64,000 bases of DNA, taken from positions 922,235-986,234 of the forward strand of contig NW_003314280.1 in the NCBI RefSeq assembly GCF_000143415.4. Reading direction: 5' to 3'. A program made the position numbers and the translations under genes. The notes under the pieces were generated by a model. That model searched no databases and was not told where the DNA came from. It saw nothing but the letters and a program-made list of their open reading frames with translations. Source of the DNA: Selaginella moellendorffii. Lineage: Eukaryota > Plantae > Lycopodiophyta. Below, one piece after another: positions 15,400 through 22,492 of this stretch (position 1 is its first letter; each line of letters opens with the position of its first letter).

Positions 15400-17200
15400 T
15401 CATCCTTGAATGAGTGGGAGGCCAACAGCGATGACGATGAACGTTGCAGGAGCTCCAAATCTCAAGTGATTCCAGAAGGAGAGATTGTATGGATGCTCCT
15501 CCATTCTGCTGGCCTGCTCGCTCACGATTATGTTGGCCGCCGATCCAACCAGCGTCAAGTTTCCAGCCACGGTGCTCACCCAGGCGAGGATCAGCCACGC
15601 TTTCTTCACGCTCGCTCCCTCGGTTGCGGCGGCCGAGGCTGCTACTCGAGCACCCAAGAGAAGAACTAGAATGAAAACCAGAAAGAAGAGATCATGAGCA
15701 AAGAAGAATACTCTCGTCCTTCCAAACTTACCTGTAGGCACATTTGATGCAACGTTGGAGAGGAGGATTACCACCGCGGACAGAATTGCAATTCCAGCAG
15801 CCGTGTTGATGCGAGCGTGTGGTTCGACGGCGTCCCAGAGTTGTCCAGGAGCGCCAGTCCGGTTGAAACCACGCACTGCTATAAACATCCCCGAGAAGAA
15901 TACCAGCAGGGAGTATGATACCTGGTGTAACCAGTGACGCAAGCAAGTACCACCAAAGAAAAAGATAGAAAAGTTTGGCGCTTGCCTGGTCGAGGCTCGG
16001 ACTAGCATCCGTGAAGTCCAACACCATGAGAACAATCGCCGCGGTGATGGCCGTCCATGAGAGATCCAAGCCGTAAAGGAACGCCACCAGCATGCCGATC
16101 GTCACCAGATACACGGACACCTTCCAGACCTTCTTCCGGAATCTTTGAAACCGACTGAGACTTGCCTGTGGAGTGTCCTGAAGCTCGGCGTGAGGAGGAA
16201 CTTGGAAGTGCCCGGAACCTTTGGGCTCTAGCCGCAGGATCTCGTTGATGGCAATGAGCGACGCGCGTTGAAGGTGGCGGGACGACGAACTTGATCTAGG
16301 CAGCGGAGGAGCTCCAGCTTCTTGCCTCAATTGTCCGTCGGGTGTGCTAGTAGATGCTGCTACACTCTTTCCAAGGTCGGGTGTATCAGCTGCTTGTCCT
16401 TCCAGGTCTGGAGTTTGGTAAGAACTGTCCTGCTGTTTTGGTTCTTGTCGATGATCTTGCTGCTGGCTTCGTTGTTCTTGAGTGAAGCTCAATCCAGAAT
16501 TGAGCAGCTCCGTCTCCGGCCGCTGCTGCTCTAGTTTGATCGAGATGTCACTACTCTCAGCGTCCTCGTCCACACCTCGCAGCTTCTTCCAGTAGTAAGC
16601 CAGCAAGAGCAGCGTGTTTGCAATGAGTCCCAGGACCATGGCCGGCACCACCCCACCCAAAAACTTGCCAAACGCGATCTTGCTCTCCACGGCGATCACC
16701 AAGTTCTGTGGATTGCCGATCGGGGTGGCCGCGGAGCCAATGTTGGCACTGGAAGCAAGAGCAATCAGATAGGGCTGAGGGGGGAGCTTCTTTTCTCTGC
16801 ATACCTCGAGAACAAACTGCGTGAGCACGACACAGGTGGTGTCATTGGTGAAGAGCGCGCTACACAGCGCCGAGAGGAGGCAAAGCCGACATAGCAGATC
16901 CTTGCCGCCGAGGCTCCGCCACGAGAGGGCGTGGCCCAGGTACTTGAACGCGTCGGCCCTCTCCAGATAGACGCTTACGACCATGGTGCCGAAGAGGAGC
17001 CCCAGAATCGGCAGATCCACGGCCGCGAATGCCTCGGCCGGCGAGAGAACCTGGAAGACGACCATGAGGCAAGCGCCGAGCAGCGACCCGGCAGTCCTCC
17101 CGATCGGCAAGAACGGCACCACGGGCACCACCGCCATAATCCAGAAGACGCCGAAGGCGAAGCATCCCAGGACGACCTTGGGCGTCGACGCCCACGCCAT
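15400..17200 (-). CDS. Lsi2: Silicon efflux transporter Lsi2 (ArsB/CitM family)
   Basis: [77 protein letters not shown]; two introns in the 3' part. Confidence 0.93.
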
Positions 17201-17511: not shown

Positions 17512-20500
17512 ATGGGGGCGGCCCTTCTCCTTGTGATAGCGATTCTGCGCAGCTGCCACTCCTTGACGATCCACCAGTGCGATTTGGACGCCGGCGAGGA
17601 GAATGCTCTCGCGGCCCTGATGCAATCACGCATCGGCGTGTTCTATTCCTGCGATCGGTCGGGGCATGTTAAATCCTTGGAGCTGTATGCGAAGGATGCG
17701 AGAATCATCCCCAGGCAAGTTTGTGATTTTCCATGGCTGGTAAGCTTGTCCGTCGTTGGTGGTGAGAATTCCCTCCCCTCTTGCTCTTGCGGGATTGCTA
17801 GCCTCGAGCATGTAGATCTCTACTCGTTTTCGTCGGAGTCCTTTCTTCCAAGTTGTGGTCCCCGTGATCTTCCTAGCTTGGTGTTTCTTCAGTTTTATAG
17901 TGTCAATGCCTCGATCCCCATGGACACGGTTTGCAGTCTCTTCCATCTCGAACAGCTCCATATTATAGAGAGTTATTTGTTTCTAGGATCCATAGCTTGT
18001 GTTTCCAGGCTTTTGCATCTTACCACCATTCAACTGACTAGGTGTGGCTTGATGCTTGAGATTCCATCGGAGTTATGTGAGCTAGAACGCTTGACAGAAC
18101 TGGATATGAGTCAAAACTCCCTCTTTGGTCCCATCCCTCCGTGTCTAGGATCCTTGAAAAATCTTACTGAGCTTCTTCTCTTCCAAAACAACCTGAGTGG
18201 GAAAATCCCAGCCTCTCTCGTCCAGCTTAAACTTCTCAAGAGCCTAGTCCTGTATGCCAATAACTTGGAAGGTCCTATTCCACCACTTCAAGGGAATAAG
18301 ATCGAGGTCTTGGATCTATCAAGTAACAACCTCACAGGTGCATTGCCGGACGTCATAGCAAACTTATCGAGCTTGAGAGTACTCTCAGCAGCCAATAACT
18401 CACTTAGCGGCGTTCTTCCTCGTTTCGCCAGCAGCTCCAGGATACAGGAACTTGATCTTTCAACAAACGAGTTTTATGGGCCGCTCCAGCCAACTATATG
18501 CAACCTCACAAGGCTAAGTGTTCTCAGGCTTTCACGTAACTATCTCAACTCGGACTTCTTGTTAACTCCCAATTGTTTCCAGAGCATAACAGAGTTGGAC
18601 TTGCACGCCAACCAGCTCTATGGACGCTTGCCTCCAGGTTTGCTGAGCTTATCCACTTTGGAGAGAATAGATCTTTCTATGAATCAGTTCACAGGCTCTC
18701 TACCAGCACTAGGCCACAACATGACCGGTTTGACATCCATGGAACTATCTAACAACTGGCTAACAGGAACTCTGGAAGACTTGCGTTTTAACGAGCAGTG
18801 CAATCTTGGAGGTTTAGACTTGTCACACAATGACATCGGTGGCACCATACCAGGCTACATAAGCAACTGCAGCGGATTAAATGTGCTAAATCTCAATGAC
18901 AATTCTTTTCAAGGGACTATTCCATGGGAACTCGGCAACTTGGTTGGCTTGGGTACGGTAATGCTTCGGGGTAACAGGCTAGGCGGGGAACTCCCAGAGA
19001 GTTTAGGAAACTTGACAGTGTTAACTGTTCTAGAACTGAGCGAAAACAGTTTTACAGGGAAGCTGGAATCGACGGGTATAAACAGGCTGCGGTATCTCAA
19101 CCTTCTCCTACTCAGGTCGAACGCCTTCGATGGATTAATTCCAAACTGGATAGGGAGCTTTTCGGCTTTCCTCTCTGGGATAGATCTTTCACACAACAGG
19201 TTCTCTGGACAACTCTCTCATGACATAGATATGACGGGCTTGGGAATCATTCCCCTTCCAAGGTGGCCATTGCAGCTGCTTGGCTTCCCAATAGTAAACG
19301 ACATACTTATCAATCAGAAAGGACAGCTTCGTCGTTATGAGAGCATGCCATACCAGATAAGTTTTCTCGATCTCTCCAGCAACTTTTTAGAGGGAGAGCT
19401 TCCGGACTCTTTCGGTAACATGCAGCGGCTCATGTACCTGACACTCTCGGGAAACAGGTTCAGTGGAAAGATCCCGGCTAGTTTTGGAAGACTTTCAGTG
19501 CTTGAGGGCCTAGACTTGACAAGGAACAGACTATCTGACTCAATTCCGGAGACTCTCGTCAATCTTACTAAGCTGGGATACTTCAACGTTTCTTACAACA
19601 ATCTCTCAGGAACAGTTCCCTCCAAAGGCCAGTTTTCTACTTTCGGCTGCGATTCATATATCGGAAACAAGTACCTCAACCTGCCCTGCTCCCAAGTTCT
19701 AGAAAGCGGGCTTGTGCAGAGAAAGATGGTAATTGGTTGGCATCGCGGGTTGATACTTGGTTTGATAGGCGTGGCCATTGGCTGCGTCGTACTTCTGGTT
19801 GGGTTTGCGTTCCTCTACTACTACAAATGGAAAGTCAGAACTCCAGCAGCAGCTGGCGAGCAGAAACTTTGCTCGATCTCGTCAAGCATGAGAAAAAGCG
19901 AGCTCTGGACCGCCACCCAAGGCTTTGACGCCAAAAACATAATCGGAACAGGCGCTTCGAGCACTGTTTACAAAGGCAGGCTAGCCCGGGATGGAAAGTC
20001 TGTGGCCATCAAAGTTTTCAGGCCTCGGAAGGATGATTGGAACTCGGCAACGGAAATTGAAGCCTTGAGCAGAATCAAGCACAGGAACTTGGTCCGTTTT
20101 CTCGGGGTCTGCTGGGAGGACGACTGTAAGGCACTTGTGTTTGATCTCATGCCGAATGGAACACTCGACTCACATCTCCATGACGTTTCCGAGAAGGTTA
20201 AGGTTTTCACCATGAAACAAAGGCTGAAGGTTGCTCTCGGAGTGGCTTACGCTGTTCGATACCTCCACCACGAACTCAATGCCGGCGAAGCAATCGTTCA
20301 CGGAGACTTGAAGCCGAGCAACATTTTCCTGGATGACGAGATGGAAGCGCACGTCGGAGACTTTGGAGCGGCCAGACTCTTGCAAGCTGTTAATGCCTAC
20401 GAGGATTCCAAGTCGGAGTTGAGAGGCTCCATTGGCTACATGCCACCAGGTACGCTTTACAGCTTCTTTTTAAAACTTTTTCGATGCTTCGAGTTTCCAG

Positions 20501-20826
20501 AGTTAGCGGTCTCGAACAAGCTTTGCGCGAAGACCGATGTCTACAGCTATGGAATCATCCTTCTGGAAATGCTCACGGGCAAGCGACCCACGAATAGCAT
20601 GTTTAAAGACGGGAGAACCCTTCACGACTGGGCTCGTTCCAGCTTTCCAAATCTGGAAATCTTGCTGGATCCAACACTGTTGTCCCAGGAAGAGCCTCTC
20701 GAGTTCCCGGTGGCAAGAGAACTCTTCCGGCTCGGCATTCTCTGTAGCAGCGAGCAGCGCGAGCACCGGCCAACTATGGACTTCGTCACGTCGATGCTAG
20801 CTCAAATAAGCAGCCTGGGAAACTGA
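17512..20826 (+). CDS. LRR receptor-like kinase with non-RD kinase (LRR-XII/FLS2-like kinase); one 51-bp in-frame intron at 20450-20500
   Basis: Signal peptide, ~20 plant LRRs (LxxLxLxxNxLSGxIP), TM segment, IGTGASSTVYKG, HGDLKPSNIFL, DFG, GSIGYMPPE after splicing. Confidence 0.93.
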   Translation: MGAALLLVIAILRSCHSLTIHQCDLDAGEENALAALMQSRIGVFYSCDRSGHVKSLELYAKDARIIPRQVCDFPWLVSLSVVGGENSLPSCSCGIASLEHVDLYSFSSESFLPSCGPRDLPSLVFLQFYSVNASIPMDTVCSLFHLEQLHIIESYLFLGSIACVSRLLHLTTIQLTRCGLMLEIPSELCELERLTELDMSQNSLFGPIPPCLGSLKNLTELLLFQNNLSGKIPASLVQLKLLKSLVLYANNLEGPIPPLQGNKIEVLDLSSNNLTGALPDVIANLSSLRVLSAANNSLSGVLPRFASSSRIQELDLSTNEFYGPLQPTICNLTRLSVLRLSRNYLNSDFLLTPNCFQSITELDLHANQLYGRLPPGLLSLSTLERIDLSMNQFTGSLPALGHNMTGLTSMELSNNWLTGTLEDLRFNEQCNLGGLDLSHNDIGGTIPGYISNCSGLNVLNLNDNSFQGTIPWELGNLVGLGTVMLRGNRLGGELPESLGNLTVLTVLELSENSFTGKLESTGINRLRYLNLLLLRSNAFDGLIPNWIGSFSAFLSGIDLSHNRFSGQLSHDIDMTGLGIIPLPRWPLQLLGFPIVNDILINQKGQLRRYESMPYQISFLDLSSNFLEGELPDSFGNMQRLMYLTLSGNRFSGKIPASFGRLSVLEGLDLTRNRLSDSIPETLVNLTKLGYFNVSYNNLSGTVPSKGQFSTFGCDSYIGNKYLNLPCSQVLESGLVQRKMVIGWHRGLILGLIGVAIGCVVLLVGFAFLYYYKWKVRTPAAAGEQKLCSISSSMRKSELWTATQGFDAKNIIGTGASSTVYKGRLARDGKSVAIKVFRPRKDDWNSATEIEALSRIKHRNLVRFLGVCWEDDCKALVFDLMPNGTLDSHLHDVSEKVKVFTMKQRLKVALGVAYAVRYLHHELNAGEAIVHGDLKPSNIFLDDEMEAHVGDFGAARLLQAVNAYEDSKSELRGSIGYMPPGTLYSFFLKLFRCFEFPELAVSNKLCAKTDVYSYGIILLEMLTGKRPTNSMFKDGRTLHDWARSSFPNLEILLDPTLLSQEEPLEFPVARELFRLGILCSSEQREHRPTMDFVTSMLAQISSLGN

Positions 20827-20861: not shown

Positions 20862-22492
20862 TCATATGCTTATATCTTTGTAGCGCTTGAAAATCTCCTC
20901 TACTCCTGCGGTAACTTCCGCCGGAAGGGGCCTCGGAACTTGGAAGGCATCGATGTTCTCTTTGAGCTGCTCCATCGTCGTGGCACCAATGATGGTGCTG
21001 GTCACAAAGGGACGATCGCGCACAAATCCGAGAGCAAGCTGGACTGGAGTTAAGCCGTGCTGCTTCCCGAGGCTCACGTATTTGTTTACGGCTTCCTGAC
21101 AGAAACGGCACCCACATCGGGTAAGTATGATGGAAGCTTGTCATGACCGACCTGTGCAAGAGATGTCTTATATCGTCCCATGTATCCAGGGAACGCGTTC
21201 AATCGTCCTCGCTTCGCAGCGGGGCTGTCAGGATTGGCGTACTTTCCACTCAAGGCACCGCCAGCCAGTGGAGAGTACGCCAGCAATCCAACGTTGCAGT
21301 TGTGATGGCTACACACCTCCGTTAAGTCGACTGTTCACAGGAAACGTTGTCAGACGAAGTCCACGGGATGCGAGTTTGCACCTTCAAAGCGGCAGCGAAC
21401 GAGCAAGCTGTAGTTGTTTTGGATGCTCACGATCTTGGGAAGGCCGAGCTTCTCCGCAGCATCAGTGAATCTCATGATGCCAAACGATGTTTCGTTTGAG
21501 ACGCCAACGTAGCGAACCTGGCGTATCGTGAGTATCGTGAGAACGATGAATCAAAACAAGCCTTCAAGCGAGAACCTTTCCCTCCTGAATGACCGAGTTG
21601 AGAGCTTCCAGTTGCTCCTCGAACGACACGCTCTCTCGCCACCTCGATACATCGTAGAAAAACTCGCCAAAGAGGGGCACGTATCGATCAGGCCTGAATC
21701 AAACTATATAGGAGAAGAAGCAAACAAAAAGATAGAGGAAAACCATACCAGTGTATCTGTAGAAGATCAATGTGGTCCGTCCCGAGGCGCAGCAAGCTCT
21801 TCTCCACACTTTCTTTCACGTTTGCTGCGTCGACTCTCACAGTCTTTCCACTCTCGCGGAGGTAAGATGATCGATCGGAATAGCCTGAAACTTTAGTCGC
21901 GATTATTACCTGGAGAAACCAACACGCATGCCAACAAGATAGTTTGCAACAGTAAAAAGGAAAAGGAGGAAAATATAAGCTAGGCAAACAAAAGCATCAA
22001 GAAATCTAGAGCTTACCTTGTCGCGCGATTGGTTTTTCAGCCAGGAGCCAATGTAGCGATCTGTCCGCCCTTGTGTCTCTTTGGCCGGAGGAACAGGATA
22101 CTGTCAGACAAACCATGTAAGATACTTCCCAAGATAATACCAAAGCATTCTATACCATCTCGGCAGTGTCGAGTATGTTGATTCCATTCTCGAGGGCATA
22201 GCTTAGTTGCTCGTGAGCGTCGGCCTCGCTGTTTTGGACCCCCCAGGTCATCTAGAAGCAAGCCGCAAGCAGCGCGATGGATTGATACTCTCAAAATCCA
22301 AGCAAAAAAAACAGTGCAACTTACAGTTCCCAGCGTGACCTCGCTGACGACGAGCTCCGAGTCGCCGAGCTTGTTGTAGCGCATCGAGGCGCTGGCGCTG
22401 GCGCGGGCAGCTACATCTCTCCTGGATGTAAATCGAAAACTCCTGCCAGCATTGAGAGCTTGCAATGGAGGAGGAGGAGCCACGGTAGCCAT
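20862..22492 (-). CDS. Plastid aldo-keto reductase (Tas-like), multi-exon
   Basis: Transit peptide; MRYNKLGDSELVVSEVTLGT, NILDTAE, IIATKV, SLLRLGTDHIDLLQIHW, LLAYSPLAGGALSGKY, STIIGATTMEQLKENI. Confidence 0.92.

What the first reader, a model, noticed from the sequence alone, without database searches (positions are those of the whole stretch)
17512..20826. Mosaic immune receptor: RLP-type island domain (Kx5Y + ~4 LRR) on a non-RD kinase
Seen: the LRR array is interrupted at ~19220-19355 by a non-LRR island (DIDMTGLG...ILINQKGQLRRYESMPYQ), followed by about four LRRs and a capping region. The kinase has HGDLKPSN (non-RD) and a single intron in the GYMPP/E motif. Known: island + 4 LRR ectodomains with KGx4Y (Kx5Y) are typical of kinase-less LRR-RLPs and of the RD-type BRI1/PSKR group, whereas non-RD LRR-XII receptors (FLS2, EFR, Xa21) lack an island. 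Inference: a domain-shuffled PRR architecture that might signal without SOBIR1 and may inform on RLP/RLK evolution.
Basis: partly seen in the sequence, partly recalled or inferred. Interest (0 to 1): 0.7.

Follow-up and report, generated by a model that had tools for sequence, protein, structure and literature searches.

The report
Island-bearing receptor with immune-type kinase
This Selaginella gene encodes an intact cell-surface receptor that joins the "island plus four repeats" outer module of kinase-less immune receptors to an EFR/Xa21-type kinase, and the same design in ferns and another lycophyte shows it is an old receptor type relevant to how plant immune receptors arose.

Summary
Window 17512-20826 (+) of Selaginella moellendorffii is one uninterrupted ORF. 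It has about 21 LRRs, a 38-residue non-LRR island (19243-19356) containing KGQLRRY, then exactly four LRRs and a Cys cap. A GxxxG-rich TM and an HGD (non-RD) kinase follow. A 51-nt phase-1 intron sits in GYMPP|E.

The two halves have different affinities:
- **Kinase.** It falls in a 98/97-supported clade with EFR/Xa21/At3g47570-type LRR-XII kinases. Xb (EMS1, PSKR-like), XI and MIK2-like kinases fall outside. It shares the XII intron site and phase.
- **Last four LRRs.** They fall with kinase-less LRR-RLPs and PSKR-type receptors (97/80). They carry the QxxT loop and the E2 residue typical of that clade.

The gene is not a one-off shuffle. A Selaginella paralog (HRD), Diphasiastrum (HLD), Adiantum (HCD and HLD) and an unidentified, intron-free RNA-seq-run contig (HCD) have the same design. 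Whether this reflects an ancient domain swap or an ancestral state is unresolved. SOBIR1 independence is untested, and the TM is RLP-like while the outer juxtamembrane is not.

The scan found this design before on another piece of this genome (s1-421072). That note agrees with this report and adds conifers, which I could not confirm.

Verdict: a new variant of a known kind, of moderate interest.

The parts
17512..20826 (+). Whole coding region of the receptor kinase (ATG to TGA). Exon 1 is 17512-20449 and exon 2 is 20501-20826.
   Evidence: Single ORF. 96% identical to S. moellendorffii XP_024545094.1 on the other haplotype. Pfam LRR_1/LRR_8/LRR_14 plus Pkinase.
17512..17946 (+). Hydrophobic N-terminus (probable signal peptide, by eye) and a Cys-rich N-terminal region with degenerate repeats. 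There is no LRRNT_2 hit.
   Evidence: Sequence read. Pfam lists no LRRNT_2. The signal peptide is inferred, not tested.
17947..19242 (+). LRR1-LRR17, regular plant-type 24-residue repeats (aa 146-577).
   Evidence: Regex LRR parse. AF2 model of aa 430-745 shows a regular solenoid at pLDDT around 90-97.
19243..19356 (+). Island domain (aa 578-615, 38 aa) with KGQLRRY (Kx5Y, nt 19318-19338). A beta-hairpin is predicted at aa 598-602/605-609 with KG at the turn.
   Evidence: K603 aligns to a lysine at least 90% conserved under a KGxxxxY consensus. AF2 hairpin. 8 of 46 allelic substitutions fall here, 7 of them nonsynonymous.
19357..19692 (+). C3 region: four LRRs (aa 616-711) plus a Cys cap (aa 712-727). 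E at position 2 of the penultimate LRR. GQFST (QxxT loop) at nt 19627-19641.
   Evidence: The C3 tree places it with RLPs and PSKR-type receptors at 97/80. HMM log-odds for RLP versus XII is +3.7, which is marginal.
19693..19926 (+). Outer juxtamembrane (1 acidic, 2 basic residues), TM helix (about aa 746-771, GLILGLIGVAIG with GxxxG motifs) and inner juxtamembrane.
   Evidence: three GxxxG motifs. GxxxG occurs in 79% of 14 RLPs versus 1% of 207 XII receptors. Mean acidic residues in the outer juxtamembrane are 7.1 in RLPs and 1.0 in XII.
19927..20823 (+). Protein kinase domain, interrupted by the intron. GTGASSTV, VAIK (K834), HGDLKPSN (20299-20322, non-RD), DFG (20359-20367), GYMPP|E.
   Evidence: Pfam Pkinase E=1e-38. 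Motif coordinates. The kinase tree places it in the XII clade at 98/97.
20450..20500 (+). 51-nt phase-1 intron (G|GTACGC...TTCCAG|AG), in frame and without a stop.
   Evidence: It is removed in the NCBI model of the other allele. That allele has a 1-nt deletion inside it. The paralog and a Magnolia LRR-XII gene have an intron at the same site and phase.

Best explanation
This is a functional single-pass LRR receptor kinase of Selaginella moellendorffii. It belongs to a small, old family of seed-free vascular plants that combines two modules normally found in different receptor classes.

**Outside the cell.** About 17 LRRs are followed by an RLP-type island (a beta-hairpin carrying the conserved lysine of the Kx5Y motif) and the four-LRR 'C3' module with a QxxT loop. 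In RXEG1, PSKR1 and BRI1 this module is the docking site for SERK/BAK1 co-receptors.

**Inside the cell.** The kinase is a non-RD kinase of the LRR-XII (EFR/Xa21) clade.

**Most likely mechanism (inferred, not shown).** A ligand binds the inner LRR surface together with the island. The island plus C3 then recruits a SERK co-receptor as in RLPs and PSKR. The SERK kinase trans-activates the receptor's own XII-type kinase, which gives an immune-type output without an obligatory adaptor kinase. The GxxxG-rich TM leaves room for an additional SOBIR1-like partner.

**Shown here:** the anatomy, the intact state of the gene, the discordant affinities of kinase and C3, the shared intron, and the presence of the design in other lineages.

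**Inferred:** ligand binding, SERK recruitment and immune function.
For: - **Intact gene.** The ORF is intact in both haplotypes, and nonsynonymous differences are few in C3 and the kinase.
- **Kinase tree (52 rows, LG+C20).** The focal kinase sits in a 98/97* clade with EFR/Xa21/At3g47570-type kinases plus fern, Marchantia and lycophyte kinases. Outside it are EMS1 (Xb), PSKR-like proteins (confirmed against PSKR1 and BRI1 structures), RGI- and PEPR-type XI and MIK2-like kinases.
- **Nearest kinases.** By word search and BLAST they are all XII, at 38-41% identity and 204-229 bits, against 156-172 bits for EMS1.
- **Intron.** The same phase-1 intron at GYxAP-G|GT occurs in the focal gene, its paralog and a Magnolia XII gene. 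EMS1 is intronless.
- **Island plus C3.** The best matches are the paralog, then kinase-less RLPs aligning from the KG..Y motif. XII receptors align over the LRRs only. The C3 tree gives a 97/80* clade of 25 rows: the focal protein, all 5 other island-bearing XII-kinase proteins, all 14 RLPs, all 3 PSKR-type proteins and 2 stray rows (one XII, one RD). 25 of 26 XII rows fall outside.
- **Motif frequencies.** QxxT/S is found in 86% of RLPs versus 11% of XII; E2 in 86% versus 28%; TM GxxxG in 79% versus 1%. The focal protein has all three.
- **Structure.** The AF2 model (pLDDT 85.6) shows the island leaving the solenoid as a hairpin. The top fold matches are the island-bearing BRL2, PSKR1 and BRI1; RXEG1 ranks 29 and FLS2 ranks 40-44.
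- **Same design elsewhere.** P0125/P0066 (Selaginella), P0021 (Diphasiastrum), P0412/P0491/P0091 (Adiantum) and P0482.
Against: - The C3 HMM log-odds is only +3.7, between the RLP range (+8 to +48) and the XII range (median about -53, with a tail up to +18).
- The C3 tree rests on 116 columns and its bootstrap had not converged.
- The outer juxtamembrane is not acidic, and the F at the end of the penultimate LRR is K, so two RLP/PSKR contact features are missing (and sequence reading).
- The third glycine of the P-loop is Ser, and APE is PPE.
- I saw no expression or biochemical data for this gene.
- No BRI1, bona fide Arabidopsis EFR or FLS2 sequence could be put in the tree. Names of the XII references are database names.
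Confidence: 0.8

Rival explanations
1. The gene is an LRR-RLK-Xb (PSKR/PSY1R-like) receptor that merely lost the arginine of the RD motif. Its island plus four LRRs would then be ordinary for its subgroup.
For: - 94.7% of ID+4LRR receptor kinases are Xb (PMC10834447).
- The best PDB kinase hit is BRI1, at 171.6 bits against 144.6 for FLS2.
- The Selaginella paralog has HRD.
Against: - The kinase tree separates the focal protein from EMS1 and PSKR-like kinases with starred branches.
- A clear XII kinase from Ginkgo also hits BRI1 best (187 versus 133 bits), so the PDB ranking is uninformative.
- A true PSKR-like kinase scores 263 bits to BRI1.
- The intron is XII-type and EMS1 is intronless.
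- Fewer than 5% of Xb islands carry Kx5Y or Yx8KG.
Confidence: 0.04
2. The design is a recent, lineage-specific domain shuffle or a gene-model artefact: an RLP gene fused to a neighbouring XII kinase in Selaginella only.
For: The kinase and C3 trees disagree. Many long database hits are obvious fused models.
Against: - One uninterrupted ORF runs from signal peptide to kinase in both haplotypes.
- A diverged paralog (about 40-50% identity) has the same layout and intron.
- The same layout occurs in Diphasiastrum, Adiantum and an intron-free RNA-seq-run contig.
Confidence: 0.05
3. The family arose by one ancient swap, in an early vascular-plant ancestor, of an RLP/Xb-type island plus C3 (and TM) onto an XII receptor kinase. 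It is a true mosaic, but an old one.
For: - Kinase and C3 give discordant, well-supported placements.
- XII receptors carry a 25-residue LRR exactly where the island sits, and align collinearly from the first post-island LRR to the kinase end.
- No bryophyte member was seen in the hits examined.
Against: - Monophyly of the seven island-bearing kinases is borderline disfavoured (AU p=0.048, delta lnL 16). This would imply several swaps or poor resolution.
- The base of the XII clade is a polytomy.
- The census was limited to a few hundred hits.
Confidence: 0.4
4. The design is ancestral. The common ancestor of XII kinases and/or of LRR-RLPs already had island plus four LRRs. Seed-plant XII receptors lost the island, and RLPs lost the kinase.
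For: - Island-bearing kinases sit at the unresolved base of the XII clade.
- They carry RLP hallmarks beyond the LRRs, namely TM GxxxG, and both Yx8KG and Kx5F in Adiantum P0412.
- The published model posits an unknown ancient ID+4LRR receptor.
Against: - There is no rooting and no bryophyte members.
- The C3 tree does not place these proteins clearly basal to RLPs.
- PSKR-type Xb receptors share the same C3 clade, so Xb ancestry remains equally possible.
Confidence: 0.2

Closest known systems
LRR-RLK subgroup XII pattern-recognition receptors (EFR, Xa21, At3g47570/At3g47110-type; FLS2 more distantly)
   Same: Same kinase clade (98/97). Non-RD catalytic loop. Same phase-1 intron in GYxAP|E. 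About 21 LRRs. Collinear from the last four LRRs through the TM to the kinase.
   Different: XII receptors have a 25-residue LRR where this protein has a 38-residue island. They have GVF-type rather than QFxT-type last LRRs (11% QxxT/S) and almost never have TM GxxxG (1%). FLS2 binds BAK1 through more N-terminal LRRs (PMC10834447).
Immune LRR-RLPs of the ID+4LRR clade (RXEG1, RLP23, Cf-9, EIX2-type)
   Same: Island immediately before the last four LRRs. KGxxxxY lysine motif. E2 and the QxxT loop. GxxxG-rich TM. The best local matches and C3 tree clade are with these proteins.
   Different: RLPs have no kinase and an acidic outer juxtamembrane, and they depend on SOBIR1. This protein has a complete kinase and a non-acidic outer juxtamembrane. 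Its island is short (38 aa) and lacks Yx8KG.
LRR-RLK-Xb PSKR1/PSY1R (and BRI1/BRL)
   Same: Receptor kinases with island plus four LRRs and a QFxTF last LRR. Same C3 clade. Top fold matches.
   Different: Xb kinases are RD and form a separate clade. They are much closer to BRI1 (263 versus 171 bits). EMS1 has no intron at this site. Their islands rarely carry Kx5Y.

Membership tests
LRR-RLK subgroup XII (defined by kinase phylogeny) | Kinase domain groups with EFR/Xa21/At3g47570-type kinases to the exclusion of other LRR subgroups | tested here: met
   a 98/97* clade of 34 rows holds the focal kinase and all named XII kinases. Xb (EMS1, PSKR-like), XI (RGI and PEPR-like) and MIK2-like kinases fall outside.
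LRR-RLK subgroup XII (defined by kinase phylogeny) | Non-RD catalytic loop (typical, not universal) | tested here: met
   HGDLKPSN at 20299-20322. XII hits are mostly HCD, with HGD, HSD and HRD variants.
LRR-RLK subgroup XII (defined by kinase phylogeny) | Single phase-1 intron in the activation-segment motif GYxAP|E (supportive gene-structure character) | tested here: met
   same site and phase as Magnolia XII gene P0026, and the same in paralog L001. Only one XII comparator was checked, and XI genes were not checked.
LRR-RLK subgroup XII (defined by kinase phylogeny) | Uninterrupted LRR ectodomain without an island | tested here: not met
   38-residue island at aa 578-615. XII receptors have a 25-residue LRR at that place.
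[quoted passage not shown] 2024) | Gap of 30-90 residues placed before the last four LRRs | tested here: met
   38 residues, followed by four LRRs.
[quoted passage not shown] 2024) | Lysine motif Kx5Y or Yx8KG in the island | tested here: met
   KGQLRRY. K603 aligns with the lysine that is at least 90% conserved. Yx8KG is absent from the focal protein but present in Adiantum P0412.
[quoted passage not shown] 2024) | QxxT/S loop in the last LRR, and E at position 2 of the penultimate LRR | tested here: met
   GQFST and LEGLDL. The F at the end of the penultimate LRR is K, so that feature is not met.
[quoted passage not shown] 2024) | C3 region clusters with RLP and Xb C3 regions | tested here: met
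   Tree at 97/80*, from a short alignment with an unconverged bootstrap. The HMM log-odds of +3.7 is only marginal.
LRR-RLP (receptor-like protein) | No cytoplasmic kinase; short tail | tested here: not met
   Complete kinase domain.
LRR-RLP (receptor-like protein) | Acidic outer juxtamembrane and a GxxxG TM for SOBIR1 association | tested here: inconclusive
   GxxxG is present three times. The outer juxtamembrane has 1 acidic residue against an RLP mean of 7.1. Binding was not testable.
LRR-RLK subgroup Xb | Kinase groups with BRI1/PSKR/EMS1; RD type | tested here: not met

The most novel reading that the evidence does not exclude
These lycophyte and fern receptors would be surviving kinase-bearing relatives of the ancestor of immune LRR-RLPs. 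On this reading, RLPs arose from an XII-kinase ID+4LRR receptor by kinase loss and SOBIR1 capture, and seed-plant XII receptors lost the island. This differs from the current model, in which RLPs are sister only to developmental Xb receptors.
Probability: 0.15. Interest if true: 0.8.

Novelty: new variant of a known kind. Interest (0 to 1): 0.57.

Why it matters
Current models (PMC10834447; PMC13006823) derive two branches from an ancient island-plus-four-LRR receptor: kinase-less immune RLPs and developmental Xb kinases. They treat XII immune kinases as island-less.

A conserved family in lycophytes and ferns couples the RLP-type SERK-docking module, and partly an RLP-type TM, to an XII immune-type kinase. 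That family is a natural version of the chimeras built in the laboratory. It gives a direct handle on three questions:
- whether island plus C3 suffices for SERK recruitment in front of an XII kinase;
- whether SOBIR1 dependence resides in the TM and outer juxtamembrane;
- which kinase the RLP ancestor carried.

It is not a new kind of molecule. The gene is already annotated under a generic automatic name, 'GSO1'.

Tried and rejected
- **PDB ranking of the kinase** (BRI1 above FLS2). Rejected as evidence for Xb after a control XII kinase gave the same ranking.
- **Total scores of the region searches**. These are inflated by repeated LRR matches, so I re-ranked by single HSPs.
- **Supplements of Ngou et al. 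2024.** They hold only per-species counts, with no per-gene subgroup or island calls.
- **Dufayard et al. 2017.** It reports islands in Xb, IX and XV only.
- **Missing or unusable DNA.** No DNA could be fetched for Diphasiastrum P0021 or Adiantum P0412. The Marchantia P0157 model is too irregular to read an intron site.
- **AU test for one clade of all island-bearing kinases.** The result is borderline (p=0.048) and the group was named after seeing a tree, so no conclusion is drawn.
- **Fold search.** It ranks island-bearing receptors first, but all plant LRR ectodomains score similarly.
- **Island as an intron.** The only GT..AG pairs inside it give 13-, 32- or 55-nt segments that are too short or break the frame (reading).
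- **N-terminal LRRs.** They show no class preference, at about 35% identity to everything.
None was seen among the gymnosperm hits examined.
- **Joined spliced protein.** I did not build one. The focal gene was searched as the uninterrupted ORF by reference, or through the database's own spliced allele P0001. For the paralog, only the exon-1 part of the kinase entered the tree.
Full report
**Identity and anatomy**

The window is from Selaginella moellendorffii. The ORF at 17512-20826 (+) is 96% identical to XP_024545094.1 (1087 aa), which lies on another scaffold with the same neighbours (a CitMHS/ArsB-type transporter upstream and an aldo-keto reductase downstream). That scaffold is therefore the other haplotype. 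The window's own database model (P0121, 1104 aa) is the unspliced ORF.

Pfam finds LRR families and a protein kinase domain. A repeat parse gives this layout:

| Feature | Residues | Window nt |
|---|---|---|
| Hydrophobic N-terminus and Cys-rich, poorly repetitive start | 1-145 | 17512-17946 |
| 17 regular 24-residue LRRs | 146-577 | 17947-19242 |
| Island, no LRR periodicity | 578-615 | 19243-19356 |
| Four LRRs | 616-711 | 19357-19644 |
| Two-Cys cap | 712-727 | 19645-19692 |
| Outer juxtamembrane, TM (about 746-771) and inner juxtamembrane | 728-805 | 19693-19926 |
| Kinase | from about 806 | 19927-20823 |

Motif coordinates are KGQLRRY at 19318-19338, GQFST at 19627-19641, HGDLKPSN at 20299-20322, DFG at 20359-20367 and GYMPP at 20434-20448. 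Its island start at 19220 only includes the tail of LRR17.

**The intron**

Nt 20450-20500 is bounded by G|GTACGC and TTCCAG|AG. It is 51 nt, phase 1, in frame and stop-free. Three results show it is a real intron:
- Removing it gives exactly the 1087-aa NCBI product and restores GYMPPE-x11-DVYSYG.
- The other haplotype has a 1-nt deletion inside it.
- The Selaginella paralog and a Magnolia LRR-XII gene have an intron at the same codon position and phase.

Searches used the uninterrupted ORF by reference or the database's spliced allele P0001.

**Is the island coding and RLP-like?**

- It is kept in RefSeq's model.
- The paralog P0125/P0066 has a 33-residue island of similar pattern (PL..L...V......(K/R)x5Y) at about 40% identity.
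- In an alignment of 34 island-bearing ectodomains, K603 sits on a lysine that is at least 90% conserved, within a KGxxxxY...IDLSxNxLxGEIP consensus.
- An AlphaFold2 model of aa 430-745 (mean pLDDT 85.6) shows the solenoid interrupted by a lower-confidence loop that ends in a beta-hairpin (aa 598-602 and 605-609) with KG at the turn.
- GT..AG pairs inside the island give only 13-, 32- or 55-nt segments, which are too short or break the frame.

The island is thus neither an intron nor a pair of decayed LRRs.

**What the kinase is**

- A kinase-only word search returns almost exclusively At3g47570/At3g47110/Xa21/EFR-named or 'LRR-XII-1' proteins.
- Single-HSP BLAST gives 204-229 bits and 38-41% identity to these, against 156-172 bits to EMS1-type Xb kinases.
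- A maximum-likelihood tree (52 kinases, 289 columns, LG+C20+F+G4) places the focal kinase in a 98/97-supported clade of 34 rows. That clade contains all seed-plant XII references plus fern, Marchantia and lycophyte kinases.
- Outside that clade are EMS1, two PSKR-like kinases, RGI-type and PEPR-like XI kinases, and MIK2-like kinases. I checked the identity of these groups against solved structures.
- The base of the XII clade is unresolved.
- BRI1 is the top PDB kinase hit, but this is uninformative. A clear Ginkgo XII kinase gives BRI1 187 bits against FLS2 133 bits, whereas a real PSKR-like kinase gives BRI1 263 bits.

The refutation condition 'kinase clusters with Xb' is not met.

**What the island plus four LRRs is**

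- With aa 571-735 as query, the best single alignments are the paralog (about 50% identity), then kinase-less RLPs (EIX2, RLP6/7/12-named) that align from the KG..Y motif onward. XII receptors align only from the first post-island LRR.
- A tree of the four LRRs plus cap (57 rows, 116 columns) has a 97/80 branch uniting 25 rows: the focal protein and its paralog (97/90), the Diphasiastrum, Adiantum and Logan island-bearing proteins, all 14 RLPs, all 3 PSKR-type receptors and 2 stray rows (one XII, one RD). 25 of 26 XII rows lie outside. The alignment is short and the bootstrap had not converged.
- Profile log-odds (RLP-HMM minus XII-HMM) are +3.7 for the focal C3 and +11 for the paralog. They are +24 to +35 for the fern and Diphasiastrum proteins and +20 to +28 for PSKR-type. 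Leave-one-out RLPs give +8 to +48, and XII gives -68 to +18 with a median near -53. The focal C3 is on the RLP side, but only just.
- Discrete features agree with the RLP/PSKR type:

| Feature | RLPs (n=14) | XII (n=207) | Focal protein |
|---|---|---|---|
| QxxT/S loop | 86% | 11% | GQFST |
| E at position 2 of the penultimate LRR | 86% | 28% | E |
| TM GxxxG | 79% | 1% | three motifs |

- Two features are not RLP-like. The outer juxtamembrane has one acidic residue against an RLP mean of 7.1. The last residue of the penultimate LRR is K rather than F.
- The fold search ranks the island-bearing BRL2, PSKR1 and BRI1 first and FLS2 at 40-44, but differences among plant LRR ectodomains are small.

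**Not a one-off**

- An exhaustive HMMER search with aa 571-1104 found only a few proteins whose best stretch runs from the island motif through the kinase.
- With names from cluster look-ups, these are: Adiantum nelumboides P0412/P0491 (island with both Yx8KG and KGYVAYF; HCD), Adiantum P0091 (HLD), Diphasiastrum complanatum P0021 (KGGFLTY; HLD), and P0482 from an intron-free contig of sequencing run SRR32617115 (HCD).
- All of their kinases lie in the XII clade. The Adiantum and Logan kinases form a 97/96 subclade.
- An AU test of all seven island-bearing kinases as one clade is borderline (p=0.048). One origin is therefore neither shown nor excluded.
- Within the family the RD position varies (G, R, L, C).
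- Among the hits I examined there were no bryophyte or seed-plant members with this layout.

**Literature**

- Ngou et al. 2024 (PMC10834447) report that 94.7% of receptor kinases with an island before the last four LRRs are Xb, and that fewer than 5% of Xb islands carry Kx5Y or Yx8KG. They also report that EFR lacks the QxxT/S loop and that RLP TMs with GxxxG are needed for SOBIR1 binding. The remaining 5.3% are not described.
- A 2026 review repeats the two-branch model of RLP and Xb (PMC13006823).
- Dufayard et al. 2017 list islands only in Xb, IX and XV.
- Full-text searches found no description of an XII-kinase ID+4LRR family.

**Interpretation**

The gene is best read as a functional receptor kinase that pairs an RLP/PSKR-type ligand-and-SERK-docking module with an XII immune-type kinase. 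It belongs to an old family of seed-free vascular plants. The mechanism is inferred by analogy with RXEG1, PSKR1 and EFR and is untested: the ligand is held by the LRRs and island, a SERK is recruited through K603 and the C3 QxxT region, and the receptor's own non-RD kinase is trans-activated.

Whether the family stems from an ancient swap (my estimate 0.4) or preserves an ancestral arrangement (0.2) cannot be decided with these data.

**Allelic variation**

Between the two haplotypes, 8 of 46 coding substitutions fall in the 114-nt island (binomial p=2e-4). Seven of the eight are nonsynonymous, while KGQLRRY is unchanged. The nonsynonymous-to-synonymous contrast with the rest of the gene is not significant (Fisher p=0.07). 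This fits a variable ligand-contact surface but could also reflect relaxed constraint.

**Earlier scan note**

Note s1-421072, on another piece of this genome (probably the allelic or paralogous locus), reached the same reading. I saw it only after my own analyses.

Noticed in passing
L001:5640-5720 (S. moellendorffii GL377579.1, paralog XP_002970184.2 / P0125): The NCBI model reads through the GYVAP|E intron and ends in a nonsense tail. In the +1 frame after an intron of about 60 nt, the kinase continues normally (EYGSDGTMTTAADVYSYG...RPRM). The 898-aa allele model stops at the same point.
   Followed up: partly
window 19243-19356 versus L005: The island is a hot spot of allelic change: 8 of 46 substitutions in 3.5% of the coding length, 7 of them nonsynonymous, with the KGQLRRY motif untouched.
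   Followed up: partly
about 100 XII-type proteins: In EFR/Xa21-type receptors, one repeat within the last few LRRs (four to five LRRs from the end) is consistently 25 residues long (IPxE(I/V)xxLxSLSxxLxLSxN). This is the region where the island sits in this family.
   Followed up: no
window 15728-17200 (-): A 490-codon ORF for a CitMHS/ArsB-type membrane transporter ends about 300 nt upstream of the receptor's start, in divergent orientation. The same neighbour is present on the other haplotype.
   Followed up: no
window 20862-22000 (-): An aldo-keto reductase gene with short introns has its 3' end only about 36 nt from the receptor's stop codon (tail to tail). This is the tight gene packing typical of this genome.
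   Followed up: no
window 17512-20826, database entry P0121: The window's own deposited protein model (1104 aa) keeps the 51-nt intron as 17 extra residues inside the kinase activation segment. The allelic model removes it.
   Followed up: yes
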